This document shows positions 3,001-64,000 of a stretch of DNA of 64,000 nt, one piece after another. Position 1 is the stretch's first letter. Every line of letters begins with the position of its first letter. Where the stretch lies: positions 26,723-90,722 of the forward strand of contig NIVC01003570.1 in NCBI GenBank assembly GCA_002269645.1. The letters run 5' to 3'. The translations under genes were made by a program, and so were the position numbers. The DNA comes from Macrostomum lignano (lineage: Eukaryota). The notes under the pieces are model-generated. The model did no database searches. It had not been told where the DNA came from and saw nothing but the letters and a program-made list of their open reading frames with translations.

Positions 3001-3670
3001 GCTCCTGCAATGGTCGCGCTGTCTGGCCTCTGGTGCCGATCGGAGCTCTCTTGACGTTGATCTTCCTGATGCCGTCGTCAGCTGCATTCTTGCCGGTCAA
3101 GGACTTCTCACTCTGGACAGCTTTTTCCACCTGGGCAGCAATCTGGATTGCTCCGTCCAGGGTGAGCTTTCGCTCTAGCAGGAGGCGTTCGCGCACCTTC
3201 GCTGATGAAGTGCCGAAGATCAGCTGGTCCAGGATGAGGTCGTCGTGAAGGCTCTGGAACTCACAGTCTCTGGCGGCATGACGCAAGTTTGCCACGAATG
3301 CGTGCACGCCTTCGCCGCTCCGCTGGACGCACTTCCGAAAGTCATGGCGCTTGGCATACACGCTGACGGTGGGCTGAAAGTGCTCCTTGAGCAGTTTGCA
3401 TGCCGCTTCGAGTGTCGCTGGAGCTTCATCTGGAGACTTGATGAGAGTCCGGTAGACTCGCACTCCTTCCCGCCCGAGGCAGTGCACGAGCAGTGCTATC
3501 TTCCTGGCTTCTTGCAAGCCGTCGACTCCTGAAGCTAGCAGGTAGGTGTCGAACTCAGCGGCCCAAGTTTCCCATGAAACCACAGGTGTTCCTGGGTTTT
3601 CGAGAAATGGAGGCGGTTCTCTGAGGTTTAGTCGTAGCTCTGGCGCTGTGGCGTTGTCAGAGCTGCTCAT
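2..3670 (-). CDS. Gag-Pol polyprotein, at least ~1220 aa, 3' partial
   Basis: ATG at 3670 (MSSSDNATAPELRLNLREPPPFLENPG...W..W...FDTYLLASG...RKIALLVHCLGREG). Same frame holds two Zn knuckles (CSHCDKPGHRTGSDPRC, CKKCGKLNHFASVC), protease LLVDTAAKVSII (~2722), RT VVHYQDDI (~1855), RNase H CDSSDVALGATLSQ, integrase HQGH...CSAC and GIKHRRTPFYCPQQNGGVERFN (~300). Frame was spot-checked at these points, not codon by codon. Probably absent from the ORF track because no stop lies inside the window. Confidence 0.93.
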   Translation of the reverse strand, partial: MSSSDNATAPELRLNLREPPPFLENPGTPVVSWETWAAEFDTYLLASGVDGLQEARKIALLVHCLGREGVRVYRTLIKSPDEAPATLEAACKLLKEHFQPTVSVYAKRHDFRKCVQRSGEGVHAFVANLRHAARDCEFQSLHDDLILDQLIFGTSSAKVRERLLLERKLTLDGAIQIAAQVEKAVQSEKSLTGKNAADDGIRKINVKRAPIGTRGQTARPLQEPCCSHCDKPGHRTGSDPRCAARGKACKKCGKLNHFASVCKSSTTVPHSAQKKVQGVDFDSSAQQSIFAVSTDKKGEYKRASVRINGFSTPLLVDTAAKVSIINMQTCRKLFGAKVPLRPSKRQLVSYNGSSISVAGEIDATVEFECVQLPSFTFTVVMDGDDLMGIDLMDKLNCRVLGPSGHQIAAVESEEPPTTSMPEWIPAKYHALGTGLGEIKGFCHRPRVDPTVSPVAQRLRRLPLALRQECDSEIQRWEEEGIIERVDGDIPDWQSNVTCARKADGKLRLCVDLRSVNKAIIPDSMSLPTFADLVTEFNNSKFFSRIDLNQSYLQLPLHDDAKNLTCFHTESGLYRFRRMPFGISSAPAAFQKVVGKILQGIRGVVHYQDDIAVHAATEAEHESRVLQVLDKLLQHRVTVNLKKCTFKASEIEFVGHRVSAAGIQPLQSHTESVSKLKAPTNTAELASFLGFAKFFQFYIKNLSHVAEPLTALLRKDAPWNWDAKCEAAFSEVKRLISSAPCLKFFDQDHETVVSCDSSDVALGATLSQVDEHGQLRPVAFASRALSDTERRYSASEKEALACVWSCEHWHLLLYGRKFKLLTDHQALTTLLSPRGVGQRPLRLQRWCERLFVYDFDIEYVPGKLNVQPDFLSRYGYDGKSAANESNEQHQSESDINLVLARSAEPISVTQLADATKSDNQLQRVIGFLINGWPAEVPADLKGFHQVQHELYLWNDGCCLARGSRAVIPTNLRDLVLAEAHQGHLGVAKVKARCRDTVWWPRIDSDVEAFVRNCSACVLSEKAFKPIKVPWSTTELPAGPWRQLQVDVVGELPEANVPQSHRFFIVVHDLYSKWPEIIASLSVTSAACIEALRSLFVRWGLPDEITTDNGPQFVSTEFTDFLSSLGIKHRRTPFYCPQQNGGVERFNGFIKTSLRALLADGVPVKQAVQELLLAYRSSEHALTKKSPAELMLGRKLRLPLDRLQPVSTESTMDQELRCSVTERQQ

Positions 3671-3782
3671 TTCTAACTTCGCTGTGCTGAGTTTGCAGAA
3701 TTGCAATGCGATAGCGAGAGTTGGGCTTGTGGGCCTTGGCTGCCGTGAGTTGAGTTGAATTTTGCGCGGGGTGGTTTTTTGC

Positions 3783-3804
3783 CAAGTCCCTGCTTGCGAT
3801 GCCA
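3783..3804 (-). promoter_or_regulatory. Primer-binding site
   Basis: TGGCATCGCAAGCAGGGACTTG directly after the LTR. Its complement ends in CCA like a tRNA 3' end. The tRNA was not identified. Confidence 0.7.
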
Positions 3805-3805
3805 G

Positions 3806-3883
3806 TGTTGTGGCCGCTGGCCAAATGAATAAAGTCAATAATTCACTTAAGGCGAAGGAGAGGAGAGGTGGCTCTCATCTACA
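3806..3883 (-). repeat. Candidate 5' LTR, ~78 bp
   Basis: Minus strand TGTAGATGAG...GGCCACAACA has TG...CA ends and sits 1 nt from the PBS. The partner LTR is outside the window, so the outer boundary is inferred. Confidence 0.7.
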
Positions 3884-4993: not shown

Positions 4994-6222
4994 GCCTACA
5001 AGGACAGGGCAAACCTGCTGCCGGAGCCCCTGCTGCCCAACCTCAACGAGCGATTCACCAAAGAGCAGCTGCTGTTCATCGCCTACTCACAGGTGAGAAT
5101 CCTGGCCCGCTGCTCTAAGCCTAATGAGGCTGCCTTGTTCAACTGTGCTGGTCCCGCCTCCAGCTTTGATTTTATCCCATCCAAGATTTCACATCTCTTA
5201 GCTGCCGTGCTTTTCAGTTTCTCCCTGCTCCCCAATTCCCTAATCCCCAATTCCCGATTCCCCAATTTCCGAATCCCTGATTCCCTAATCCCCAATTCCC
5301 GAATCCCCAATTCCCGAATCCCCAATTCCTGAATCCCCAATTCCCGAATCCCCAATTCCCGAATCCCCAATTCCCGAATCCCCAATTCCCGAATCCCCAA
5401 TTCCCGAATCCCCAATTCCTGAATCCCCAATTCCCGAATCCCCAATTCCCGAATCCCCAATTCCCGAATCCCCAATTCCCGAATCCCCAATTCCCGAATC
5501 CCCAATTCCCGAATCCCCAATTCCCGAATCCCCAATTCCCGAATCCCCAAATTCCCTAATCTCCAATTCCCTAATCTCCAATTCCCGAATCTTTAATTCC
5601 CGAATCCCCAATTCCTGAATCCCCAATTCCCAAATCCCTAATTCCCGAATCTTCTCCAATTCCCGAATCCCCAATTCCCGAATCCCCAAAATACTCTAGT
5701 CCCTAATTTCCGAATCTTTCCGAATTTCCGAATTCCCCAGAATTCCCGTGATCTCCGCTTCCCAAAGATTCTCACTTCCTGTAGTGAATTGTCCTAACTT
5801 CTAAACTCCCTTAGCCCCAAAGCGGCCTTTTCGTGTGACAAACTCAAAGTAGGGTCGAACTTGCTCAGCAGTCTTTATCAGCCAGCCATTGCCACACGCC
5901 GTCCTCTCTCAGTGTGCACAGGTGTTTCTTTTATGGCGATGAATAATCGGGCTTTGTGGAAGATTTTACGTTTCAAATCTTTATTTGTCTACTTTTCTCA
6001 GTAGTTTAAATCGATCTCTCACTTCTCCTTTGTATCGCCGCGCAGACCTGGTGCGAGCTGGAGACCAAGGAGTCGGTGCGCCAGTCGGCGAAGGTGGACC
6101 CGCACCCGCCCGGCAAGATGCGGGTGTGGGGGCCCATCAGCAACAACCACGACTTTGGTGGCGTCTTTAAATGCCCGGCCGGGGCTCGGATGAACCCGGT
6201 GAAAAAATGCACCGTCTGGTGA
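4994..6222 (+). CDS. M13 family metallopeptidase (neprilysin/ECE/PHEX-like), last two coding exons 4994-5092 and 6046-6222
   Basis: AG/GT-bounded exons join in phase 0: [33 protein letters not shown]|[58 protein letters not shown]. This matches the M13 C-terminal pattern EQLFF..YAQ.WC...DPH.P...RV...SN...F...F.C...MNP..KC.VW. Upstream exons are not in the window. Confidence 0.92.
5227..5690. repeat. 15-bp intronic minisatellite CCCCAATTCCCGAAT
   Basis: Tandem units inside the last M13 intron; source of the GIREL/DSGIG ORFs. Confidence 0.95.
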
Positions 6223-11326: not shown

Positions 11327-14300
11327 TCACACGCGAAGGAAGAATTCCCCAGGTACGTCCTGTAGCTCGTGCGGCAGAACGGGCAGTCTCAGCAGGTAGC
11401 AGGCGTCCAGGTGGAACAGCACGGCCTGGCAGTCGGCACCGCAGCTGAGTATGCAGTCGGTCAGGTCCGTCACGGGCTGCACGGTCCGGTAGAGGGGCCC
11501 ACTAGAGGATGTCACGTTCAGGTAGACTTTTTCGGACCGAGTGAACACATTGCACGGGAACAAGGGAAATTTGCACGGTTGAGATCTTGGAAGTTCCGCT
11601 GATAGTAACGATAAAAACTAATTGCAGGCCCAATGTCGCTGAGAAAGCATACAGTGTTATTGATCTGGTGTAAGTATGGAGCGGTTTATTCGCAGCGAGC
11701 GTGTGTCTTGGTCTGAGGGTTTCACAAGTTTATTGCTGGTTGAAGGGTGTCTTGGTCTGAGGTGGTTTCACAAGTTTATTGCTGGTTGAAGGGTGTCTTG
11801 GTCTGAGGTGGTTTCACAAGTTTATTGCTGGTTGAAGGGTGTCTTGGTCTGAGGGTTTCACAAGTTTATTGCTGGTTGAAGGGTGTCTTGGTCTGAGGGT
11901 TTCACAAGTTTATTGCTGGTTGAAGGGTGTCTTGGTCTGAGGGTTTCACAAGTTTATTGCTGGTTGAAGGGTGTCTTGGTCTGAGGGTTTCACAAGTTTA
12001 TTGCTGATTGAAGGGTGTCTTGGTCTGAGGGTTTCACAAGTTTATTGCTGGTTGAAGGGTGTCTTGGTCTGAGGGTTTCACAAGTTTATTGCTGATTGAA
12101 GGGTGTCTTGGTCTGAGGGTTTCACAAGTTTATTGCTGGTTGAAGGGTGTCTTGGTCTGAGGGTTTCACAAGTTTATTGCTGGTTGAAGGGTGTCTTGGT
12201 CTGAGGGTTTCACAAGTTTATTGCTGATTGAAGGGTGTCTTGGTCTGAGGGTTTCACAAGTTTATTGCTGATTGAAGGGTGTCTTGGTCTGAGGGTTTCA
12301 CAAGTTTATTGCTGATTGAAGGGTGTCTTGGTCTGAGGGTTTCACAAGTTTATTGCTGATTGAAGGGTGTCTTGGTCTGAGGGTTTCACAAGTTTATTGC
12401 TGGTTGAAGGGTGTCTTGGTCTGAGGGTTTCACAAGTTTATTGCTGATTGAAGGGTGTCTTGGTCTGAGGGTTTCACAAGTTTATTGCTGGTTGAAGGGT
12501 GTCTTGGTCTGAGGGTTTCACAAGTTTATTGCTGGTTGAAGGGTGTCTTGGTCTGAGGGTTTCACAAGTTTATTGCTGGTTGAAGGGTGTCTTGGTCTGA
12601 GGGTTTCACAAGTTTATTGCTGGTTGAAGGGTGTCTTGGTCTGAGGGTTTCACAAGTTTATTGCTGATTGAAGGGTGTCTTGGTCTGAGGGTTTCACAAG
12701 TTTATTGCTGGTTGAAGGGTGTCTTGGTCTGAGGGTTTCACAAGTTTATTGCTGATTGAAGGGTGTCTTGGTCTGAGGGTTTCACAAGTTTATTGCTGGT
12801 TGAAGGGTGTCTTGGTCTGAGGGTTTCACAAGTTTATTGCTGGTTGAAGGGTGTCTTGGTCTGAGGGTTTCACAAGTTTATTGCTGGTTGAAGGGTGTCT
12901 TGGTCTGAGGGTTTCACAAGTTTATTGCTGATTGAAGGGTGTCTTGGTCTGAGGGTTTCACAAGTTTATTGCTGATTGAAGGGTGTCTTGGTCTGAGGGT
13001 TTCACAAGTTTATTGCTGGTTGAAGGGTGTCTTGGTCTGAGGGTTTCACAAGTTTATTGCTGATTGAAGGGTGTCTTGGTCTGAGGGTTTCACAAGTTTA
13101 TTGCTGGTTGAAGGGTGTCTTGGTCTGAGGGTTTCACAAGTTTATTGCTGGTTGAAGGGTGTCTTGGTCTGAGGGTTTCACAAGTTTATTGCTGGTTGAA
13201 GGGTGTCTTGGTCTGAGGGTTTCACAAGTTTATTGCTGGTTGAAGGGTGTCTTGGTCTGAGGGTTTCACAAGTTTATTGCTGGTTGAAGGGTGTCTTGGT
13301 CTGAGGGTTTCACAAGTTTATTGCTGATTGAAGGGTGTCTTGGTCTGAGGGTTTCACAAGTTTATTGCTGGTTGAAGGGTGTCTTGGTCTGAGGGTTTCA
13401 CAAGTTTATTGCTGGTTGAAGGGTGTCTTGGTCTGAGGGTTTCACAAGTTTATTGCTGGTTGAAGGGTGTCTTGGTCTGAGGGTTTCACAAGTTTATTGC
13501 TGATTGAAGGGTGTCTTGGTCTGAGGGTTTCACAAGTTTATTGCTGATTGAAGGGTGTCTTGGTCTGAGGGTTTCACAAGTTTATTGCTGGTTGAAGGGT
13601 GTCTTGGTCTGAGGGTTTCACAAGTTTATTGCTGATTGAAGGGTGTCTTGGTCTGAGGGTTTCACAAGTTTATTGCTGGTTGAAGGGTGTCTTGGTCTGA
13701 GGGTTTCACAAGTTTATTGCTGGTTGAAGGGTGTCTTGGTCTGAGGGTTTCACAAGTTTATTGCTGATTGAAGGGTGTCTTGGTCTGAGGGTTTCACAAG
13801 TTTATTGCTGATTGAAGGGTGTCTTGGTCTGAGGGTTTCACAAGTTTATTGCTGATTGAAGGGTGTCTTGGTCTGAGGGTTTCACAAGTTTATTGCTGAT
13901 TGAAGGGTGTCTTGGTCTGAGGGTTTCACAAGTTTATTGCTGGTTGAAGGGTGTCTTGGTCTGAGGGTTTCACAAGTTTATTGCTGATTGAAGGGTGTCT
14001 TGGTCTGAGGGTTTCACAAGTTTATTGCTGGTTGAAGGGTGTCTTGGTCTGAGGGTTTCACAAGTTTATTGCTGGTTGAAGGGTGTCTTGGTCTGAGGGT
14101 TTCACAAGTTTATTGCTGGTTGAAGGGTGTCTTGGTCTGAGGGTTTCACAAGTTTATTGCTGGTTGAAGGGTGTCTTGGTCTGAGGGTTTCACAAGTTTA
14201 TTGCTGGTTGAAGGGTGTCTTGGTCTGAGGGTTTCACAAGTTTATTGCTGGTTGAAGGGTGTCTTGGTCTGAGGGTTTCACAAGTTTATTGCTGGTTGAA

Positions 14301-16824
14301 GGGTGTCTTGGTCTGAGGGTTTCACAAGTTTATTGCTGGTTGAAGGGTGTCTTGGTCTGAGGGTTTCACAAGTTTATTGCTGGTTGAAGGGTGTCTTGGT
14401 CTGAGGGTTTCACAAGTTTATTGCTGGTTGAAGGGTGTCTTGGTCTGAGGGTTTCACAAGTTTATTGCTGGTTGAAGGGTGTCTTGGTCTGAGGGTTTCA
14501 CAAGTTTATTGCTGGTTGAAGGGTGTCTTGGTCTGAGGGTTTCACAAGTTTATTGCTGGTTGAAGGGTGTCTTGGTCTGAGGGTTTCACAAGTTTATTGC
14601 TGGTTGAAGGGTGTCTTGGTCTGAGGGTTTCACAAGTTTATTGCTGATTGAAGGGTGTCTTGGTCTGAGGGTTTCACAAGTTTATTGCTGATTGAAGGGT
14701 GTCTTGGTCTGAGGGTTTCACAAGTTTATTGCTGATTGAAGGGTGTCTTGGTCTGAGGGTTTCACAAGTTTATTGCTGGTTGAAGGGTGTTTTGGTCTGA
14801 GGGTTTCACAAGTTTATTGCTGGTTGAAGGGTGTCTTGGTCTGAGGGTTTCACAAGTTTATTGCTGATTGAAGGGTGTCTTGGTCTGAGGGTTTCACAAG
14901 TTTATTGCTGATTGAAGGGTGTCTTGGTCTGAGGGTTTCACAAGTTTATTGCTGATTGAAGGGTGTCTTGGTCTGAGGGTTTCACAAGTTTATTGCTGAT
15001 TGAAGGGTGTCTTGGTCTGAGGGTTTCACAAGTTTATTGCTGATTGAAGGGTGTCTTGGTCTGAGGGTTTCACAAGTTTATTGCTGGTTGAAGGGTGTCT
15101 TGGTCTGAGGGTTTCACAAGTTTATTGCTGGTTGAAGGGTGTCTTGGTCTGAGGGTTTCACAAGTTTATTGCTGATTGAAGGGTGTCTTGGTCTGAGGGT
15201 TTCACAAGTTTATTGCTGGTTGAAGGGTGTCTTGGTCTGAGGGTTTCACAAGTTTATTGCTGGTTGAAGGGTGTCTTGGTCTGAGGGTTTCACAAGTTTA
15301 TTGCTGGTTGAAGGGTGTCTTGGTCTGAGGGTTTCACAAGTTTATTGCTGATTGAAGGGTGTCTTGGTCTGAGGGTTTCACAAGTTTATTGCTGGTTGAA
15401 GGGTGTCTTGGTCTGAGGGTTTCACAAGTTTATTGCTGGTTGAAGGGTGTCTTGGTCTGAGGGTTTCACAAGTTTATTGCTGGTTGAAGGGTGTCTTGGT
15501 CTGAGGGTTTCACAAGTTTATTGCTGATTGAAGGGTGTCTTGGTCTGAGGGTTTCACAAGTTTATTGCTGGTTGAAGGGTGTCTTGGTCTGAGGGTTTCA
15601 CAAGTTTATTGCTGATTGAAGGGTGTCTTGGTCTGAGGGTTTCACAAGTTTATTGCTGGTTGAAGGGTGTCTTGGTCTGAGGGTTTCACAAGTTTATTGC
15701 TGGTTGAAGGGTGTCTTGGTCTGAGGGTTTCACAAGTTTATTGCTGGTTGAAGGGTGTCTTGGTCTGAGGGTTTCACAAGTTTATTGCTGGTTGAAGGGT
15801 GTCTTGGTCTGAGGGTTTCACAAGTTTATTGCTGGTTGAAGGGTGTCTTGGTCTGAGGGTTTCACAAGTTTATTGCTGATTGAAGGGTGTCTTGGTCTGA
15901 GGGTTTCACAAGTTTATTGCTGGTTGAAGGGTGTCTTGGTCTGAGGGTTTCACAAGTTTATTGCTGGTTGAAGGGTGTCTTGGTCTGAGGGTTTCACAAG
16001 TTTATTGCTGATTGAAGGGTGTCTTGGTCTGAGGGTTTCACAAGTTTATTGCTGGTTGAAGGGTGTCTTGGTCTGAGGGTTTCACAAGTTTATTGCTGGT
16101 TGAAGGGTGTCTTGGTCTGAGGGTTTCACAAGTTTATTGCTGGTTGAAGGGTGTCTTGGTCTGAGGGTTTCACAAGTTTATTGCTGATTGAAGGGTGTCT
16201 TGGTCTGAGGGTTTCACAAGTTTATTGCTGGTTGAAGGGTGTCTTGGTCTGAGGGTTTCACAAGTTTATTGCTGATTGAAGGGTGTCTTGGTCTGAGGGT
16301 TTCACAAGTTTATTGCTGGTTGAAAAGACAAACAGCTAAATTCGATTTTCATCAAACTTGCTAAGATATTTTCTAATATTCTATTAACTAATATCGAATG
16401 CTTTTGAATAGTCGGTCAAGGTAGGCCTAAACGCTGCACTGCACCAAACTCTGTAATCAAGCTGCTGCCTCACCGGAGCGCAGGTAGATCTGGCGGTACA
16501 CGGAGATCCGCATTGCTCCTCCGCACATCTGGGCGGGGTTGCCAGCGCAGTTGGCGTAGCAGTCGGCGTCGGGTGCCGCGCCAAAACTGCCGTACGAGTT
16601 GCCGCAATAGCATTCGATGTGGAATTGGACGCCGAAGTACTTGAAGTTGCCGTAGCCGCAGAGACGTTGGACCAGCCCGCCAGGCCGTTGAGGTCGCGGC
16701 TCCCATCTTCCGAGAAGTCGAAGAAGCAGCCCAGAGGATCGAATTCGGCAGCCATGGAGTGGCGCAGGGCGAGGCAGCACAGAACTGCCAGCAGAAGGGT
16801 TGAGGCTCGCACTTTCAAGATCAA
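11327..16824 (-). pseudogene. Secreted WSC-domain + PAN/apple-like protein gene, frame-broken as assembled (exons ~16824-16474 and 11598-11327)
   Basis: Signal-like STLLLAVLCCLALRHSMA then FDPLGCFFDFSEDGSRDLNGLAG in one frame. LCGYGNFKYFGVQFHIECYCGNSYG...CYANCAGNPAQMCGGAMRISVYR (WSC Cys pattern) follows in another frame. Phase-1 GTGAG donor at 16473 joins the TATCAG acceptor at 11599 to give AELPRSQPCKFPLFPCNVF...DCILSCGADCQAVLFHLDACYLL...*. Start codon not identified. Confidence 0.75.
11702..16323. repeat. 44-bp intronic minisatellite GGGTTTCACAAGTTTATTGCTG(G/A)TTGAAGGGTGTCTTGGTCTGA, ~105 copies
   Basis: Period 44 (11881 to 11925); nearly invariant except one G/A site. Confidence 0.97.
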
Positions 16825-17984
16825 AGTGTGCTGTGCAGTCCTTCTGTTTTGTTTCGCGCATATTTATCGGGAATGAATGCAGCTTGGATGCTAAAAATTG
16901 CTGGTTGCCATGCACTGTTGCAACTGTCAACAGTTGGTCCGTGCCAGAGCCCAAAGCCCATCTATTTCTATCTATTTTCGCATCTCGTTGCATCGCTTCC
17001 GATGCAAAGACGTCTAAACTAGTGGTCCTTGTTCCGATTGCTAATAGTCCGCTTCAGTCTTAGGGGGAAGGAGAGGTGGGGAGCAGAGAGGAGAGGCATT
17101 GGCGTCCCTGGCAACGGGCTCCTTGAGAGCGCGCTAATTAACGAAAGACGCAGGTCTGGCCGTACTTCTGTTTCCTGTGGCTTCTCCTTCCCTCTGTTTT
17201 GCACCCCTTCATTTCTCACCAAGAAGGATGAACCACCGCAATGTGCCATCCTGTAATTTTCCACCCTGAAATGTGTCTTGCCTGCATGTGTAATCCAGGG
17301 GGCCGTAGCCTACTCGATCCAGAGCGGCGCTAAATTATTTCGTATGTGCCGGCGTCAGTACAGCCGCTGTGCACTCCTGTATGAGCCATTGTTTCGAAAA
17401 TCTTTTCAGCCGGAAATGGAAAGATAAACAAAAAAAATAAAATATTTGTGACTTATTATTAAAATTGATTCGTTTTAAGACGTGAAATTATTTGTTCAAG
17501 TGTTTTTAACATTGTAATTATGATCACGCCGAAATTCTTAACATTACACTTGTAAAGCTCTCTTTATCAACTGCGTTGCCTTTATTTTGTCTAGCGGATT
17601 CTGCTGTATTTTTGAGAGCTTACAACGGAAAGCATCGCGTTTTTCTTCACTTTAGCTCAAAGAAGTAAAGCTACGCTCCTCGGGGTTGGCGGTCTGTCTT
17701 GGCTGCGCCAGCTGTTCCTCCTCTGGAGCGGCCTCCGCGCCGGGCTCATTTTGTTTTTTCCGGCCGGCCGTGTCCGCCTGTCAACCGCATGGGCCAGTTA
17801 GCCGCCTCGCTTTTGATGTCTCTCTGAAACGGATGCTGGCTGCTGTAGTTTTTTCATGCGCTGCTTCATTCCACTGTGAACTCCTACTTGTTTGCGGCAT
17901 TCTATTGTCTTGGTTGCCTCATCATTTATGCCCGCCGAAATTTACTCTAGCCCCGCCTCCTTACTTAGGCGTCCATTATTTCAT

Positions 17985-20556: not shown

Positions 20557-38773
<18,217 letters not shown>

Positions 38774-50391: not shown

Positions 50392-56639
<6,248 letters not shown>

Positions 56640-57840: not shown

Positions 57841-57952
57841 TCGTTCCTGAAACATGACTTCTCAGAATAGATTTTATATTTATCGGCACTCAAATGAATG
57901 ATAAAATGAAAGTCACAGTTTGGTCAGCTGCTGGTCACTGCGTTGATTTTTG

Positions 57953-59804
57953 TCAGTCTGCTCCTCCGTCGAAGCCACCATCAAAGTCGCCATTATAGTC
58001 CATGTTCTGATCGAACTGGTCATGGCTCATACCGTGATCGAACTGGTCATGGCTCATACCGTGATCGAACTGGTCATGGCTCATACCGTGATCGAACTGG
58101 TCATGGTTCATGCCGTGATCAAATTGGTCATGGCCCATACCGTGATCGAACTGGTCATGGCTCATACCGTGATCAAACTGGTCATGGCTCATACCGTGAT
58201 CGAACTGGTCATGGCTCATACCGTGATCGAACTGGTCATGGCTCATACCGTGATCGAACTGGTCATGGCTCATACCGTGATCGAACTGGTCATGGCTCAT
58301 ACCGTGATCGAACTGGTCATGGCTCATACCGTGATCGAACTGGTCATGGCTCATACCGTGATCGAACTGGTCATGGCTCATACCGTGATCAAATAAGTCA
58401 TGGCTCATATCGTGATCGAATTGATCGTGATCCATGTCGTGATCGCTCTCATCTTGATCATCGTCGTCCTCCTCGTCTGGGGAGCATCTGGGCTGCATCA
58501 TTCTGTTGGCAATCCACGGCTTGGCGCGCCGAGGCTTAGCGCCCCACGACCGGCCGCCCCCAGACAGGCCTCCTCTGAACAGTCCCCGAGCAAGCCGCCC
58601 ACGAACAGCCCTCTGGACAGGCCATCCTTGGACGGGCCACCCCTGGACAGGCCACCCCTGGACAGGCCAGCCCTGGACAGGCCACCCCACTTCGGAATGC
58701 CAATATTGGGCCGCTCCTGGCCAGGCCGCCGGCGAGGCCGCCAGCCAGGCCGCCGACCATGGCCGAGCCCATAAGCTTGGGAACGCCCGAAAAGCTTTTC
58801 GGCGCACCGAAGCTCATTGGGCGCTGCTGGTGCATCATCGGCGCCTGCGTCTGACCGAACGGCATCGAGCCGCGGTAGGCGGGCATCGACACGCTGGGCT
58901 CCACTGGATAGAATAGCAGCAGCACGGTTGGCGCGAACTCATGGATAAGGCGCGCAGTCGAGTCGTTGTAGTTCAGGTCACGCCGGGTCGAGTCGTAGCC
59001 CAGATGGCCGGCCCAGCCGCTGCAGTGGTCCCGCAGTCTCTGCCTGAAGTATTGGTTGCTTCGCAGTCCGTCGTAGGTTTGTCTTCGGTAGGGCTCGGCC
59101 AGGGTCATGTAGGCCTGGTAGATCTGCTGTGTGCGCCTTGACGCCTCGTACTCGTTGCTAGGGTGCCATCTGAAATTACAGAGTGGATTGCTAATCCAGC
59201 CAGTATGCCAGCTGCAAGTACGGAGTGGATTGCGAATCTAGCCAGTATGCCAGCTAGAAGTACGGAGTGGATTGCTAATCTAGCCAGTATGCCAGCTGGA
59301 ATAACGGAGTGGATTGCGAATCTAGCCAGTATGCCAGCTAGAAGTACGGAGTGGATTGCTAATCTAGCCAGTATGCCAGCTGGAATAACGGAGTGGATTG
59401 CGAATCTAGCCAGTATGCCAGCTAGAAGTACGGAGTGGATTGCTAATCTAGCCAGTATGCCAGCTGGAATAACGGAGTGGATTGCGAATCTAGCCAGTAT
59501 GCCAGCTGGAATAACGGAGTGGATTGCGAATCTAGCCAGTATGCCAGCTGCAAGTACGGAGTGGATTGCTAATCTTGCCAATATGCCAGCTGGAATTAAA
59601 GTGGATTGCTTATCTAGCTAATTATAGATTTAGTAGTGTAGCACGGACTGCTAATCTAAATTGAATATTAGTTCTAATATGTCAAAGCTTTTCAAAGCAG
59701 GCGAGAACTCACCGCTCACGCAGCTGTCTGTAGGCAGATTCGATGCTCTGCTTGCTGGACAAGCCCGACACGCCCAGCACCTCGTAGTAGAAATCCTCGG
59801 CCAT
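57953..59804 (-). CDS. J-domain protein 1 (HPS instead of HPD) with Gly/Arg-rich middle and (DHGMSHDQF)n tail; exons 59804-59713 and 59169-57953; two apparent 1-nt frameshifts
   Basis: MAEDFYYEVLGVSGLSSKQSIESAYRQLRER|WHPSNEYEASRRTQQIYQAYMTLAEPYRRQTYD via a phase-2 GT-AG intron. Reaching the tail requires restoring one base near 58708 and one near 58585. Confidence 0.75.
58005..58440 (-). repeat. 27-bp repeat, ~16 copies, encoding DHGMSHDQF
   Basis: GATCACGGTATGAGCCATGACCAGTTC units with synonymous variants (CAG/CAA, TTC/TTT, GGT/GGC). Confidence 0.9.
59180..59600. repeat. 42-bp minisatellite in the J-protein 1 intron
   Basis: GAGTGGATTGC(G/T)AATCTAGCCAGTATGCCAGCT... units. Confidence 0.93.
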
Positions 59805-60034
59805 GAATCTTGCCGTCAGAGCGCGGATCAGTTTCCAGATTTTGTCTCAAATCTATATACGGACTCGGGATCGAATTCTTGCCATAGAGTGCATTTTGGT
59901 TTTCTTATTCAAATCGGCAGTTTTGAATGCAAAACGAAGGCTATTTTTTATTAAATGAAATTGGTAAAAGTTAACAGAAACGCTGCTCAGGCTACTTCCA
60001 GTAGTCAGTTGATACTTGATGATTTGATTTCAGC

Positions 60035-60876
60035 TCAGCGCCGAGCCAGCTGGTTCAGAGCCGTGGTGGTCTGCTCCGTCTGCTCGCCGTTTTTGAACAC
60101 CGTCGTCACCTTTACCCCGTTCTCGACTGTCGTTCTGACGACCGTCCGGTTGCCCTGCCCGTCTTCCGTGGTCGTCTCGCTGACCGCGCTGAACTGCCCG
60201 ACAATTCCATCGTTGCCGACGTCGGCACTGCTGAACACTTCGTTATAGACGAAGAACGGGTCGCGGAAGGCGCTCCAGAGGTTCCGGTGCAGCTGCTCGG
60301 CTGTCGTGCTGCTCCACCTGAAGCTGCCGCCACCCGGCCGCGGACCGTGGGAGCTGCGGCGAGTGCGGTCATAGTCCGCCCGGCGGCTCGGGTCCGACAG
60401 CACTTGGTAGGCCTCGGACAGCTTGCGGAATCGCAGCTCGGCCTCCGGTCGGTTGTTCGGGTTCTTGTCCGGGTGCCACCTGGAGCAGTGGTTGCAGTGC
60501 GCGGGTGAGTTGGGGTTGGCAATGACCGTTTTCCGCCTTTTCAGCGCATCTTGCTGAACTCATCTTTTTCTGGTGCTTTGCTGGCACTTAATTGATACAT
60601 TTCTCGAGTCTTAATTACGAGCCTTTCGTACACCCTGCTGACATTCTTACAGGTACTTCGCCTTTTGTCATTTACTGACATCACTAGACATCACGCACTT
60701 TACTGACATCTAGCATTCACAATGTCATCTTTACTTCTCTTTGGTATGAGGTATCTCTTTGGTATCTTTGGTAAAATCTCACCTTAGTGCCAGTCGCTTG
60801 TACGCCTCCTTAATCTCCTGGCCGTGGCCGATGGAGGCACCTCCAGAATGGCGTAAAATTCCTCGGGGTTGGACAT
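60035..60876 (-). CDS. J-domain protein 2, DNAJB2/B6/B8-like, canonical HPD; exons 60876-60783 and 60479-60035; one apparent 1-nt deletion in exon 1
   Basis: [18 protein letters not shown](A)[13 protein letters not shown]|[37 protein letters not shown]...[12 protein letters not shown]...[27 protein letters not shown]. Exon 1 is 94 nt where 95 are needed. Confidence 0.88.
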
Positions 60877-61357
60877 GGTTTCGTCTTTGCTAATCTTACT
60901 ATTCTAATTAGCATCACTTGTGTGCTTTCCAGAATATGCACGCAAATACGGTTGTGCCATAGACTACGCTTGCGCGAGCTAAAATACTTTAATTAGCACA
61001 TGTCGTAAGGTGTCGTAGCGAGTGTTGAAAAGGATTGTTGGTTTAGTGCAAAATCAAGATCTGTATATTTTTTTTTAACTAAAATGTCTTGGGTTGACCT
61101 TATAAACAAAAAAATCTTGAATGCTACTGAAGCTCAGTGAATTGAAATGAATTATTCTTTTTAAAACGCTTTTAATAACAGAGGTTCGGTGTCCGGAAAT
61201 TTGGTTTGCAGGTCGAGTGAGAGTTAGAAAATGAGAGTGCACCGATCAAAAGCACTCGTCGTAAGCAGACTTTGCTCTCTTATCTTCCAGTTCCAAATCC
61301 TTTATAACTTTTGGCTGTCCTCCACCATTCACTTGTTAGTCTTGGTACTTTTTGTTG

Positions 61358-62122
61358 TCAACACGGATGTGTTTTGTGCGAACCACCGCGGTGCGAGCTG
61401 GGACCACCATGGTGCGAGCTGGGACCACCGTGGTGCGAGCTGGGACCACCGTGGTGCGAGCTGGGACCACCATGATGCGAGCTGGACCACCATGCTGTGA
61501 GCTGGGACCACCACCGCGCTGCGATATGGGACCAACCGAGACTGTCATTGCCTTGGAGACGTTGGTCAACTTGGTGGTCAGCCCTTGATTCTCATGTCCA
61601 CCTCCTTGCCGTTGCGGGTTACATTAAGGGTCATCTCACCGCCAGTTGACTGCACGGTGGTAATTTCAATCTTGTTGCCGAACGGGTCCACATTCTTGTG
61701 TGACGGGTGCCCTTGGCGATGTGCCGCTGCACCAGCTGCTCGCAGAAGGCCGGTCGCTGAGGTCAGACGGCGAGTTGCAGACGGCCTCGACGTGCACTTT
61801 GTACGGATCCCGCAGAGAGATTAGGTTGGACGGGAAAGAGAGCGCCTCTCCGCTCTCCGACTTCTCGCTGAGGAAGTTCTTCCTGAGTGCCGTCTCGAAT
61901 TCCTCGGTTAACTGGTCCAGTTCCATGGTGGATTCCTGCTTGACTCGCGACTCCTTGGATTTAACGTCGTTCTTTTCGAGGTCCTGTGCGTTAGACTTCA
62001 AAAGGCACTGCAGGTAGCGTTTGCGTTTTTCGTTGCAGTACAGAATCTGGAAGGCCTCGCTGATGCGGAAGAAGTGCCGCTCAGACTCCGCCTTGTTGTC
62101 CGGGTTGTTCTCCGGGTGCCAC
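61358..62122 (-). CDS. J-domain protein 3 (HPE), second exon only, several apparent 1-nt frameshifts; probable (GGPSSHH)n tail
   Basis: Acceptor AAG| then WHPENNPDNKAESERHFFRISEAFQILYCNEKRKRY. A downstream frame gives KNVDPFGNKIEITTVQSTGGEMTLNVTRNGKEVDM, resembling the paralog 2 C-terminus. Exon 1 was not found and may lie beyond the terminal array. Confidence 0.68.
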
Positions 62123-62759
62123 CTTGGTGTCAGATTGGCAAGGGAGTGATTTGGTCGGAGTGAGGCAATGGGAAGCTGATAATCAGGGTTGAAACGCAAA
62201 TTGATTTCTGGTGTACAGGTGCTGTTGAGATCGAGATTGAATAGAAGAATTTACGCATTGAGGAATAAAAGCGACGCATTGAATACGGCGTACATTAGTT
62301 GAACACTTTGACAGTAGCATAATAACACCGAATCTGCAACTTGTATTCGCGATTTCGCATGAATGAAATATTTAAATTTCCACAACTGACTGTTTGTTTG
62401 TTATTAATCACAATTTGTTAGTTTAGTTAGTCAGTGAGTCACAGTCACAGACCCCTAATTGGACTATCTGGTCGCTACAAAACACTCGTGAAATTTGACT
62501 CCTAGCATTGCAGTTTTTGGAGGAGAGCAGAATAGCTCTGCGGTTAGCCCTAGCCCCTGAGGCATACATGCCTGACAATGAGAACCGGAGTCGCTATACA
62601 ACCTGTGTGAACGTGTGCCTGCATGCATAAGCCTCGTATTCGTTTGCGAGAGTGCATCAGTGGAACAGGCATGACTGCTTGGATCCTCGCCGGCTGTGGA
62701 TAGACTGTTGTCACAATTTTTGCAGTACCAAAGCCACTGCAAACTACGATAATTAAGGC

Positions 62760-64000
62760 ATTCTGGTCAGCTCAACGCACTCTTCACCGGACATCTGGTC
62801 AGCTCAACTCACTCTTCATCAGACATTCTGGTCAGCTCAACGCACTCTTCACCGGACATTCTGGTCAGCTCAACTCACTCTTCATCAGACATTCTGGTCA
62901 GCTCAACTCACTCTTCATCAGACATTCTGGTCAGCTCAACTCACTCTTCATCAGACATTCTGGTCAGCTCAACGCACTCTTCACCGGACATTCTCGTCAG
63001 CTCAACTCACTCTTCATCAGACATTCTGGTCAGCTCAACGCACTCTTCACCGGACATTCTGGTCAGCTCAACTCACTCTTCATCAGACATTCTGTTCAGC
63101 TCAACGCACTCTTCACCGGACATTCTGGTCAGCTCAACGCACTCTTCACCGGACATTCTGTCAGCTCAACGCACTCTTCACCGGACATTCTGGTCAGCTC
63201 AACGCACTCTTCACCGGACATTCTGGTCAGCTCAACGCACTCTTCACCGGACATTCTGGTCAGCTCAACGCACTCTTCACCGGACATTCTGCTCAGCTCA
63301 ACGCATTCTTCACCGGACATTCTGCGTCAGCTCAACGCACTCTTCACGGACATTCTGGTCAGTCTCAACGCACTCTTCACCGCGACATTCTGGTCAGCTC
63401 AACTCACTCTTCATCAGACATTCTGGTCAGCTCAACGCCTCTTCACCGGACATTCTTTGCGTCAGCTCAACGCACTCTTCACCGGACATTCTGGTCAGCT
63501 CAACGCACTCTTCACGGACATTCTGGTCAGCTCAACGCACTCTTCACGGACATTCTGGTCAGTCAACGCACTCTCACCGGACATTCTGGTCAGCTCAACG
63601 CACTCTTCACCGGACATTCTGCTCAGCTCAACGCATTCTTCACCGGACATTCTGGTCAGCTCAACGCACTCTTCACCGGACATTCTGGTCAGCCAACGCA
63701 CTCTTCACCGGACATTCTGGTCAGCTCAACGCACTCTTCACCGGACATTTCTGGTCAGCTCAACGCACTCTTCACCGGACATTCTGGTCAGCTCAACGCA
63801 CTCTTCACCGGACATTCTGCCTCAGCTCAACGCATTCTTCACCGGACATTCTGGTCAGCTCAACGCACTCTTCACCGGACATTCTGGTCAGCTCAACGCA
63901 CTCTTCACGGACATTCTGCTCAGCTCAACGCACTCTTCACCGGACATTCTGATCAGCTCAACGCACTCTTCACCGGACATTCTGGTCAGCTCAACGCACT
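62760..64000. repeat. 33-bp minisatellite GGACATTCTGGTCAGCTCAACGCACTCTTCACC, runs off the right edge
   Basis: Visible; many 1-2-nt indels after ~63150. Confidence 0.95.

What the first reader, a model, noticed from the sequence alone, without database searches (positions are those of the whole stretch)
57953..62122. Tandem trio of J-domain genes with HPS / HPD / HPE motifs and divergent low-complexity tails
Seen: three same-strand genes within ~4.2 kb, each with a phase-2 intron immediately before W-H-P, which points to tandem duplication. Only the middle gene keeps HPD. Known: HPD is required to stimulate Hsp70 ATPase, and DNAJB2/6/8-type proteins act against aggregation. Inference: two paralogs have lost or altered Hsp70 coupling and gained His-rich repeat tails, forming a lineage-specific cluster of one canonical co-chaperone and two J-like proteins, possibly involved in metal handling or tissue-specific assemblies. 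Best novelty candidate in the window.
Basis: partly seen in the sequence, partly recalled or inferred. Interest (0 to 1): 0.72.

Follow-up and report, generated by a model that had tools for sequence, protein, structure and literature searches.

The report
Three tandem flatworm J-domain genes
Three neighbouring chaperone-helper (J-domain) genes of the flatworm Macrostomum lignano are real, and two of them lack the key HPD motif. However, their reading frames are broken at seven places in a low-quality contig end, so this is an ordinary lineage-specific gene expansion that needs re-sequencing before anything more is claimed.

Summary
The window is the last 64 kb of contig NIVC01003570.1 of the Macrostomum lignano Mlig_3_7 assembly (PacBio CLR, Canu, one Pilon round). 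On the minus strand, 57,953-62,122 holds three J-domain genes. A has WHPS, B has WHPD and C has WHPE. All three J domains are closest to DNAJB6/B8/B2.

B aligns full length to human DNAJB6. A lost the Asp through a 4-codon loop deletion, and C has a D-to-E change. Neither change looks like a sequencing error. A and B share a phase-2 GT-AG intron before W-H-P. C shows only the matching acceptor, and its exon 1 is not in the contig.

As assembled, the frames are broken seven times: twice in A before its (DHGMSHDQF)n tail, once in B exon 1 and four times in C. Every break fits one missing base in a G/C run, and adding seven bases gives stop-free ORFs of 436, 179 and at least 256 codons. Codon bias follows the corrected frames.

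Consensus error at a noisy contig end is my favoured reading (about 0.5). Real lesions in one copy of a triplicated genome come next (about 0.3).

J-like proteins are well known, and a 123-member HSP40 family is already published for this species. This is a new member of a known kind, of low to moderate interest.

The parts
59713..59804 (-). Gene A exon 1 (MAEDFYYEVLGVSGLSSKQSIESAYRQLRE plus 2 nt). It encodes helix I and helix II of the J-like domain.
   Evidence: ATG at 59804 and a GTGAGT donor at 59712. Codon bias and GC3 of 0.8-1.0 in this frame.
59170..59712 (-). Gene A intron, 543 nt, phase 2, GT..AG. It is mostly a 42-bp minisatellite (59164-59618).
58536..59169 (-). Gene A exon 2 in the J-domain frame: (R)WHPSNEY..., then a Met/Gly/Phe-rich linker. 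As assembled it stops at TAA 58538-58536. The part 58536-59108 is the only piece on record as a called CDS (190 aa).
   Evidence: The AF2 J fold has pLDDT 88-96.
58500..58750 (-). Gene A Gly-rich low-complexity zone (GGLA/GGLSR, 15-bp repeat 58613-58688). The best coding frame steps twice by one base here. Candidate G4 runs are 58688-58685 and 58587-58584.
57953..58499 (-). Gene A putative tail: an acidic stretch (DEEDDDDQDE), then about 16 nonapeptides DHGMSHDQF (27-bp array 58008-58420), with stop TGA at 57955-57953.
   Evidence: This is the only open minus-strand frame. Unit variants are 6 synonymous to 5 non-synonymous, the array has no indels, and codon bias is best in this frame.
57873..57884 (-). 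First poly(A)-signal-like hexamers downstream of gene A (GATAAA/AATATA/TATAAA), 70-80 nt after the tail stop. There are none between 58536 and 57885.
60783..60876 (-). Gene B exon 1 ([19 protein letters not shown]|[12 protein letters not shown] plus 2 nt). It has a one-base frame break in 60830-60817, with a candidate CC run at 60821-60820.
60480..60782 (-). Gene B intron, 303 nt, phase 2, GT..AG.
60035..60479 (-). Gene B exon 2: (R)WHPDKNPNN..., a short G/F-like linker and a DNAJB6-type C-terminal domain, with stop TGA at 60037-60035.
   Evidence: Pfam 91.7 bits. Full-length alignment to human DNAJB6 deltaST 6u3r, E=4e-24.
59947..59952 (-). AATAAA, 83 nt after the gene B stop. Gene A's ATG follows about 140 nt further on.
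61763..62122 (-). Gene C, J-like part of exon 2: (R)WHPENNPDNKAESERHFFRISEAFQILYCNEKRKRY..., followed by a charged linker. Acceptor AG at 62124-62123.
   Evidence: GC3 rises from about 0.5 to 0.8-0.95 exactly at 62122.
61358..61762 (-). Gene C distal part. The best coding frame steps four times by one base: about 61751, 61712-61710, 61584-61582 and 61484. It holds a possible DNAJB6-like beta-rich C-terminal domain and the (GGPSSHH)n repeat (21-bp array 61382-61513), with stop TGA at 61360-61358.
   Evidence: Smith-Waterman against B's C-terminal domain gives p about 0.01-0.02. AF2 predicts strands at residues 142-176, pLDDT 63-71.
62759..64000 (.). 33-bp minisatellite running to the contig end. 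It probably lies in gene C's first intron. It carries 17 indels against the unit consensus, 16 of them single-base, and 16 of them lie after 63160.
   Evidence: window 64000 = record end 90722.
60927..60939 (-). Heat-shock-element-like GCATATTCTGGAA (1 mismatch), 50 nt upstream of gene B's ATG.
   Evidence: The count of such sites in the window is not above chance (19 against 16.5 expected).

Best explanation
This is an old, lineage-specific tandem array of three DNAJB6/B8-type (class B, MRJ-like) J-domain genes in Macrostomum lignano.

Gene B is a compact canonical co-chaperone. It has a J domain with HPD, a short G/F-like linker and a DNAJB6-type C-terminal domain. By homology it should deliver aggregation-prone clients to Hsp70 and trigger its ATPase.

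Genes A and C are J-like (type IV) paralogues. They keep the J fold but lack the catalytic Asp. A lost four loop codons (HP[DKNP] has become HP-S). C has HPE. They are therefore expected to stimulate Hsp70 weakly or not at all, and to act as Hsp70-independent binders or as partners or competitors of B.

Both carry C-terminal low-complexity tails that grew by expansion of in-exon 27-bp and 21-bp minisatellites. These encode (DHGMSHDQF)n and (GGPSSHH)n, whose Asp/His/Met chemistry suggests divalent-metal or pH-dependent binding.

I read the seven frame breaks in the assembled sequence as single-base consensus deletions in G/C runs. They sit near the end of a PacBio-CLR/Canu contig in a genome where short-read polishing is hampered by three-fold paralogy.

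Shown here: the genes, the motifs, the introns of A and B, the fold, the frame breaks and the codon-bias path.
Inferred: that the breaks are errors, that the tails are translated, and all functional statements.
For: Family and fold:
- Pfam DnaJ hits for all three genes.
- Best PDB matches are DNAJB6/B8/B2 for all three, and B aligns over residues 6-178 to 6u3r.
- The AF2 J fold of A is confident and has a 5-residue helix II-III loop.

Old duplicates kept open:
- J-domain identity is 38-45%, and only one 47-nt DNA match links B and C.
- Even so, there are 871 codons without a stop after seven one-base additions.
- GC3 is 0.7-0.95 in the coding frames.

The codon-bias path changes frame in the same direction at all seven places. 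One place is pinned to a missing C by comparison with sister repeat units (61484). B's break is pinned to exactly one base by J-domain spacing.

Tail evidence:
- 6 synonymous to 5 non-synonymous unit variants in the DH frame, and stops in the other minus-strand frames.
- Poly(A)-like signals lie just after the tail stops.
- Only 7 of 70 array-spanning open frames in the window are at least 15% His, and two of them are these tails.
- C's out-of-frame segment resembles B's C-terminal domain (p about 0.015), while the in-frame read-through does not (p=0.99).

Assembly quality:
- The window ends at the contig end.
- There are 17 indels, 16 of them single-base, in the terminal minisatellite. About 11 kb of arrays further in have almost none.
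- The assembly is Canu CLR plus a single Pilon round (PMC5730564).
- 93% of read pairs multi-map (PMC10733133).
Against: - No read-level or cDNA data could be consulted.
- The 27-bp and 42-bp arrays inside gene A show no single-base noise. GGG runs are called reliably elsewhere, with 1 deletion in about 125 runs. A 1,291-codon retrotransposon ORF in the same window is unbroken. The error rate is therefore not generally high.
- The breaks are clustered (4 in 270 bp in C) rather than following a smooth gradient towards the contig end.
- Pilon used both DNA and RNA-seq reads and still left these sites.
- The called CDS on record for gene A stops at 58536, and B and C are not called at all.
- No homologue of the A or C non-J regions was found. 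Conservation is therefore unproven, although the databases seem to lack this species.
Confidence: 0.5

Rival explanations
1. The frame breaks are real. This contig carries one of the roughly three post-duplication copies of the locus, and this copy is decaying. B is dead through its exon-1 frameshift. C lacks exon 1 and has four frameshifts. A is truncated before its tail. Intact copies would sit in the paralogous blocks.
For: - About 70% of Mlig_3_7 is in 3-copy paralogous blocks. These differ by 2.2% SNPs, with an edit distance of 2.5%, which implies about 0.3% indel events (PMC10733133). Seven events in about 2.6 kb of coding sequence is of that order.
- Polishing with DNA and RNA reads left the breaks in place.
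- Nearby arrays without homopolymer runs show no noise, and GGG runs elsewhere are reliable.
- B and C are not called as genes.
Against: - There is no in-frame stop in 871 corrected codons, where about one would be expected alongside that many neutral indels.
- All seven shifts go in the same direction. The two that can be sized are exactly 1 bp, and both lie in G/C runs.
- Four events within 270 bp are unlikely under a uniform neutral rate.
- Codon bias is fully retained.
- The locus is 2-6 kb from a contig end that is demonstrably noisy.
Confidence: 0.3
2. The His-rich 'tails' are not protein. They are ordinary non-coding minisatellites in the 3' UTRs, like the rest of this repeat-laden region. 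A ends at 58536 as annotated and C ends at 61666. The open frames are a by-product of repeat units that are multiples of 3.
For: - 41% of the window is tandem repeat, and 70 array-spanning open frames occur by chance.
- About a third of the arrays have periods divisible by 3.
- The tails are out of frame with the J domains as assembled.
- The called CDS for gene A stops at 58536.
- No homologue or Pfam family matches the tail ORF.
Against: - The codon-bias path leads stepwise from the J frame into the tail frames.
- The Gly-Leu-rich motif continues across the shifts: GGLAGGLA, then GGLSRGGLSR, then GGLFRGGLSGGG.
- There is a synonymous excess in the DH frame.
- Both tails are His-rich in the sense frame.
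- Poly(A)-like signals follow the tail stops, with none in the 650 nt after 58536.
- C's putative C-terminal domain lies beyond its first stop.
Confidence: 0.15
3. HPS and HPE are themselves sequencing errors, and all three genes are canonical HPD co-chaperones.
For: The locus lies near a noisy contig end.
Against: - The noise consists of indels, not substitutions.
- HPE to HPD needs a G-to-C/T substitution inside a gap-free stretch that aligns with B.
- A's motif comes from an in-frame 12-nt shorter loop, with both flanks in frame.
- Dozens of other substitutions separate the three J domains.
Confidence: 0.02

Closest known systems
DNAJB6 / DNAJB8 / DNAJB2 (MRJ-type, non-canonical class B J-domain proteins; human DNAJB6b, PDB 6U3R)
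   Same: - All three J domains have these proteins as best solved-structure matches.
- Gene B matches end to end: an N-terminal J domain with HPD, a short Phe/Gly-containing linker and a beta-rich C-terminal domain.
- None of the three has a zinc finger.
   Different: - B lacks an obvious Ser/Thr-rich anti-amyloid segment. It aligns to the deltaST construct without extra sequence.
- A has no DNAJB6-like C-terminal domain. Instead it carries a Met/Gly-rich linker, GGLSR repeats and an acidic His-rich repeat tail.
- C's C-terminal-domain similarity is only marginal (p about 0.01-0.02) and requires frame corrections.
- A and C lack the Asp of HPD.
J-like / type IV Hsp40 proteins (J fold with a degenerate HPD motif, for example the Plasmodium type IV Hsp40s and Pam16/Tim16). 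Named from established knowledge, not tested here.
   Same: - A and C keep the J-domain helices and the conserved hydrophobic core. Pfam hits are above cut-off, and the AF2 fold of A is confident.
- The catalytic Asp is missing or replaced.
- Natural HPE and HPS J-like domains also turned up in unrelated two-J-domain proteins (P0011, P0013, P0016).
   Different: - These are recent-lineage offshoots of the DNAJB6 subfamily. They sit in tandem with a canonical copy and are not members of the described type IV groups.
- A's loss is a 4-residue loop deletion rather than a point change.
- The repeat tails have no counterpart that I could find.
Expanded HSP40 family of Macrostomum lignano (123 members reported, PMC9559072)
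   Same: Same species and same family. Tandem and polyploidy-driven multiplication of J-domain genes is already documented at the level of counts.
   Different: That survey did not describe these particular genes, their HPD variants or their tails. B and C are not even called in the record examined.

Membership tests
J-domain proteins (Pfam PF00226 DnaJ) | About 65-residue four-helix J domain detected above the curated threshold | tested here: met
   Scores are A 46.8, B 91.7 and C 29.6 bits against a cut-off of 27.8. C matches only profile positions 23-62 because its exon 1 is absent. The AF2 model of A shows helices 6-10, 18-31, 37-55 and 57-84 at pLDDT 88-96.
J-domain proteins (Pfam PF00226 DnaJ) | His-Pro-Asp tripeptide in the helix II-III loop | tested here: not met
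   B has HPD. A reads HPS, with a 4-residue gap placed directly after HP. C reads HPE. B is therefore a member, while A and C qualify only as J-like.
J-domain proteins (Pfam PF00226 DnaJ) | Stimulates Hsp70 ATP hydrolysis | not testable with these tools
   Needs a single-turnover ATPase assay with recombinant J domains.
DNAJB6/DNAJB8 (MRJ-type class B) | J domain closest to the DNAJB2/6/7/8 group | tested here: met
   Top PDB hits are 6u3r (DNAJB6), 2dmx (DNAJB8), 2ej7 (HCG3) and 2lgw (DNAJB2) for A, B and C.
DNAJB6/DNAJB8 (MRJ-type class B) | DNAJB6-type beta-rich C-terminal domain | tested here: inconclusive
   - B: met. It aligns to 6u3r up to residue 186, and Smith-Waterman against the human C-terminal domain scores 74 against 26.7 +/- 5.2 for shuffles.
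- C: BLASTP and the PDB search were negative. Smith-Waterman against B gives p about 0.01-0.02, and only in the frame-shifted segment. AF2 predicts strands at moderate confidence.
- A: no similarity beyond the J domain.
DNAJB6/DNAJB8 (MRJ-type class B) | Ser/Thr-rich region between the G/F linker and the C-terminal domain | tested here: not met
   B aligns co-linearly to the deltaST construct with no inserted S/T-rich block. By inspection there are only short SS/TT patches.
J-like (type IV) Hsp40 | J fold retained with a corrupted HPD | tested here: met
   A. C: for helices II (end) to IV only.
Pseudogene | Frame disruptions, in-frame stops and loss of codon bias | tested here: inconclusive
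   There are seven frame disruptions in the assembly. After one-base corrections there are 0 stops in 871 codons, and GC3 of 0.7-0.95 is retained. C's exon 1 is not in the contig. Reads are needed to decide.

The most novel reading that the evidence does not exclude
A and C are expressed, selectively maintained J-like proteins. Their Asp/His(/Met)-rich tails were born from minisatellite expansion inside coding exons and bind metal ions or sense pH. This would tie metal or redox stress to a DNAJB6-type anti-aggregation module without Hsp70 activation. It would be an example of how a tandem-repeat-rich genome manufactures new protein tails on duplicated chaperone scaffolds.
Probability: 0.12. 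Interest if true: 0.5.

Novelty: new member of a known kind. Interest (0 to 1): 0.25.

Why it matters
If the corrected models hold, the locus gives a compact natural experiment. One canonical DNAJB6-like co-chaperone sits next to two paralogues that lost the HPD Asp in two different ways and gained His-rich repeat tails. That is useful for asking what J-like proteins do without Hsp70 activation, and how minisatellites become coding sequence.

In practice the main value is cautionary. In Mlig_3_7, genes near contig ends can carry clustered single-base frame breaks that hide them from annotation. B and C are not called at all, and A is called only as a 190-aa fragment. This affects gene counts such as the reported 123 HSP40 genes.

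Tried and rejected
- Homologue searches. Word-indexed searches with B, A and C and an exhaustive HMMER search with A found only generic J-domain matches. Nothing matched the non-J regions. The collections seem to lack this species, so absence is uninformative.
Only the 190-aa ORF piece is on record.
- Candidate exon 1 for C at 62279-62200 (MRKFFYSI / LDLNSTCTPEIN) was rejected. It needs its own frame break, lacks the end of helix II and has no usable GT donor. GC3 there is at most 0.5 in all frames.
- A general homopolymer-deletion artefact across the assembly was rejected. The (GGGAGTGCA)n arrays show 1 one-base deletion in about 125 GGG runs. Run-length variants in other arrays are structured higher-order repeats.
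- A smooth quality gradient towards the contig end is only partly supported. The first 400 bp of the terminal array and C's J-domain part are clean.
- Heat-shock elements: one 1-mismatch site lies upstream of B, but such sites are not enriched in the window.
- A DNAJB6 C-terminal domain in C was not found by BLASTP or PDB search. Only a shuffle-tested Smith-Waterman gives weak support.
- Rfam and tRNA scans were empty.
- Plus-strand ORFs over the repeats are mirror frames of the arrays and have no codon-bias support.


Full report
**Origin of the sequence**

An exact look-up of the ORF at window 58536-59108(-) places it on NCBI GCA_002269645.1, contig NIVC01003570.1 (90,722 bp), at record 85,258-85,830. 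Window coordinate x therefore equals record x + 26,722, and window base 64,000 is the last base of the contig.

The accession is the Macrostomum lignano Mlig_3_7 assembly. It was built from PacBio CLR reads with Canu 1.4. It was polished once with Pilon, using Illumina shotgun and RNA-seq reads, and then scaffolded (PMC5730564).

The DV1 line is a neopolyploid. About 70% of the assembly lies in three-copy paralogous blocks that differ by 2.2% SNPs (1.1% in CDS). The edit distance is 2.5%, and 93% of read pairs map to several loci (PMC10733133). Tandem repeats make up 15% of the genome and about 41% of this window.

**What is at 57,953-62,122**

All three genes are on the minus strand.

- **Gene A.** The ATG is at 59804 and exon 1 spans 59804-59713. 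A 543-nt GT-AG intron (59712-59170) is filled by a 42-bp minisatellite. Exon 2 starts at 59169 and reads (R)WHPSNEYEASRR...
- **Gene B.** The ATG is at 60876 and exon 1 spans 60876-60783. The GT-AG intron is 303 nt (60782-60480). Exon 2 spans 60479-60035 and reads (R)WHPDKNPNN...
- **Gene C.** An AG acceptor lies at 62124-62123, and an exon from 62122 reads (R)WHPENNPDNK...

In A and B the intron splits the codon before Trp after its second base (phase 2). In C the acceptor is at the homologous position, and GC3 jumps from about 0.5 to 0.8-0.95 exactly there.

Pfam DnaJ scores are 46.8, 91.7 and 29.6 bits against a cut-off of 27.8. C's hit covers profile positions 23-62 only.

**Relationship of the three genes**

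For each J domain the best solved-structure matches are DNAJB6, DNAJB8, HCG3 and DNAJB2. B aligns over residues 6-178 to the human DNAJB6 deltaST construct 6u3r (E=4e-24). That alignment includes the C-terminal beta-rich domain.

The paralogues are old:

- B and C are 45% identical over 40 residues.
- B and A are 38% identical over 45 residues.
- At DNA level only a 47-nt stretch (79% identity) links B and C.

The tandem-duplication reading is supported, but the event is ancient.

**Are HPS and HPE real?**

HMMER places a four-residue gap directly after His-Pro in A, so DKNP is missing. A's 'HPS' is therefore the result of a 12-nt in-frame loss, with both flanks in frame.

AlphaFold models A's J fold with pLDDT 88-96 and only a five-residue helix II-III loop.

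C's Glu codon (GAG, 62112-62110) sits inside the gap-free stretch that aligns with B. Turning it into Asp would need a substitution. The local noise consists of indels.

I regard both motifs as real. The rival that they are errors gets about 0.02.

As assembled, the reading frames are broken.

- **B, the only HPD gene.** It loses frame inside exon 1 (..SATA|[12 protein letters not shown]..).
- **A.** The J frame runs to TAA 58538-58536. The Asp/His repeat is open only in another frame (58813-57956).
- **C.** The J frame stops at 61668-61666, and the later segments are open in other frames.

A codon-usage and GC3 scan, trained on confident exons, follows these paths:

- A: frame m2 to about 58721, then m0 for 58720-58571, then m1 to 57956.
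- B: m0 to m1 near 60825.
- C: m0 to about 61790, m1 to about 61700, m2 to 61581, m0 to about 61520, then m1 through the repeat.

All seven steps go in the same direction, the one produced by a single missing base.

- The last step in C is pinned by the sister repeat units (GGTGGTCC-AGC against GGTGGTCCCAGC, at 61484).
- B's step is pinned to exactly one base by J-domain spacing.
- The low-complexity motif in A reads on smoothly across the shifts: GGLAGGLAGGLA..GGLSRAGLSRGGLSRGG..GGLLGGLFRGGLSGGG.

Adding one base at G/C runs at the seven places gives uninterrupted ORFs of 436 (A), 179 (B) and at least 256 (C, from exon 2) codons, with no stop.

**Error or real lesion?**

*For error:*

- The cluster is 2-6 kb from a contig end.
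- The terminal 33-bp array carries 17 indels, 16 of them single-base, and 16 of them lie in the last 840 bp. About 11 kb of arrays further in have essentially none.
- All shifts have the same sign, lie in G/C runs, and are 1 bp wherever they can be sized.
- Codon bias is intact and there is no nonsense codon.
- Four events cluster in 270 bp, which fits a low-quality patch better than a uniform neutral process.
- Polishing is handicapped by multi-mapping reads.

*For real lesions:*

- The 27-bp and 42-bp arrays inside gene A are noise-free.
- GGG runs are called reliably elsewhere.
- A 1,291-codon retrotransposon ORF in the same window is intact.
- Pilon had DNA and RNA reads and left the sites unchanged.
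- The density of events (about 0.3%) equals the indel divergence between paralogous blocks. One redundant copy could therefore be decaying.

I put error at about 0.5 and real decay at about 0.3. The tools here cannot settle it, and reads can.

**Are the tails protein?**

*Supporting:*

- The sense frame is the only open minus-strand frame of the 27-bp unit. Unit variants are 6 synonymous to 5 non-synonymous there, against 1:10 and 3:8 in the other frames.
- Codon bias favours the tail frames.
- There is no poly(A)-like hexamer for 650 nt after A's first stop. One cluster lies 70-80 nt after the tail stop, which matches B's 83-nt spacing. C's signals also follow its tail stop.
- Only 7 of 70 array-spanning open frames in the window are at least 15% His, and two of them are these tails.
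- In C, the segment beyond the first stop resembles B's C-terminal domain (Smith-Waterman 37-42, shuffle p about 0.01-0.02). The in-frame read-through does not (p=0.99).
- AlphaFold places four strands in that segment at pLDDT 63-71.

*Against:*

- The frames do not connect in the record.
- The called CDS stops at 58536.
- Minisatellites with open frames are everywhere in this window.
- BLASTP and PDB searches do not detect a C-terminal domain in C.

**Mechanism (inferred)**

- **B** should behave as a small DNAJB6-like co-chaperone. It does lack an evident Ser/Thr-rich block.
- **A** has a J-like domain, a Met/Gly/Phe-rich linker, GGLSR repeats, an acidic stretch and about 16 DHGMSHDQF units. 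The tail is 174 residues with 47 Asp and 32 His, pI 4.3.
- **C** has a J-like domain with HPE, a charged linker, a possible C-terminal domain and (GGPSSHH)n.

Established mutagenesis of DnaJ-type proteins shows that the HPD Asp is required for Hsp70 ATPase stimulation. A and C have therefore probably lost or weakened that coupling. They may act as Hsp70-independent binders, as modulators of B, or as metal- or pH-responsive scaffolds. None of this was tested.

**Comparison and novelty**

J-like (type IV) proteins with degenerate HPD motifs are a known class. Unrelated two-J-domain proteins with HPE and HPS even appeared among the search hits. DNAJB6-type proteins are well studied, and M. lignano is already reported to have 123 HSP40 genes (PMC9559072).

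No homologue of the non-J parts of A or C was found. However, the databases appear not to contain this species.

I file the trio as new members of a known kind, with modest interest. The immediate practical lesson is about annotation: B and C are not called, and A is called only as a 190-aa fragment.

Noticed in passing
window 2-3874 (-): An uninterrupted 1,291-codon Ty3/gypsy-type gag-pol reading frame, cut by the window start. Pfam finds protease, RVT_1, RNase H, an integrase zinc-binding domain and the integrase core (rve). Its translation appeared once in a generic ORF listing. I did not delimit or reconstruct the element. It served only as an internal control for the indel error rate.
   Followed up: partly
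window 5229-5771: A 15-bp minisatellite (TCCCCAATTCCCGAA) and its flank hold 5 of the window's 19 heat-shock-element-like matches, including the only perfect one (5642-5654). It lies 1.4-1.9 kb upstream of the retrotransposon ORF on its strand. M. lignano Ty3 families with HSEs in their LTRs are heat-induced (PMC12801592). Whether this is such an LTR was not examined.
   Followed up: no
window 62759-64000: A 33-bp minisatellite runs to the contig end. Two unit subtypes alternate up to about 63100. After that a single subtype carries 16 indels against the unit consensus (15 of them single-base) in 840 bp. This looks like unpolished long-read consensus noise at a contig end.
   Followed up: yes
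whole window: About 26.5 kb (41%) of the window is tandem repeat, in roughly 36 distinct arrays with periods of 4-88 bp. These include a 44-bp x105 array (11703-16324) and several (CTGT)n tracts. This is well above the 15% genome average reported for the species.
   Followed up: partly
window 30860-35365: Nested repeat. Blocks of an 88-bp tandem unit recur every 581 bp (later 669 and 755 bp), each followed by an identical 243-bp segment (open frame [13 protein letters not shown]...) that is present six times. This is a higher-order macrosatellite.
   Followed up: no
window 16460-17053 (-): An exon-like open segment with a WSC carbohydrate-binding domain (Pfam 46.5 bits). It is part of an unexamined gene.
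   Followed up: no
window 50392-56639 (+) and <=49194 (+): The record carries a spliced 787-aa gene (Ala/Leu-rich, no Pfam hit in its largest exon) that converges on gene A, and upstream of it a DUF4735 gene. Only about 230 bp separate B's stop from A's ATG, and about 480 bp separate C's stop from B's ATG. This species uses trans-splicing, so co-transcription of the trio is conceivable. I state the trans-splicing from memory and did not check it.
   Followed up: no
proteins P0011, P0013, P0016: Unrelated proteins from the global library carry two J-like domains each, one with HPE and one with HPS. The same two HPD variants seen here therefore recur together elsewhere in nature.
   Followed up: no
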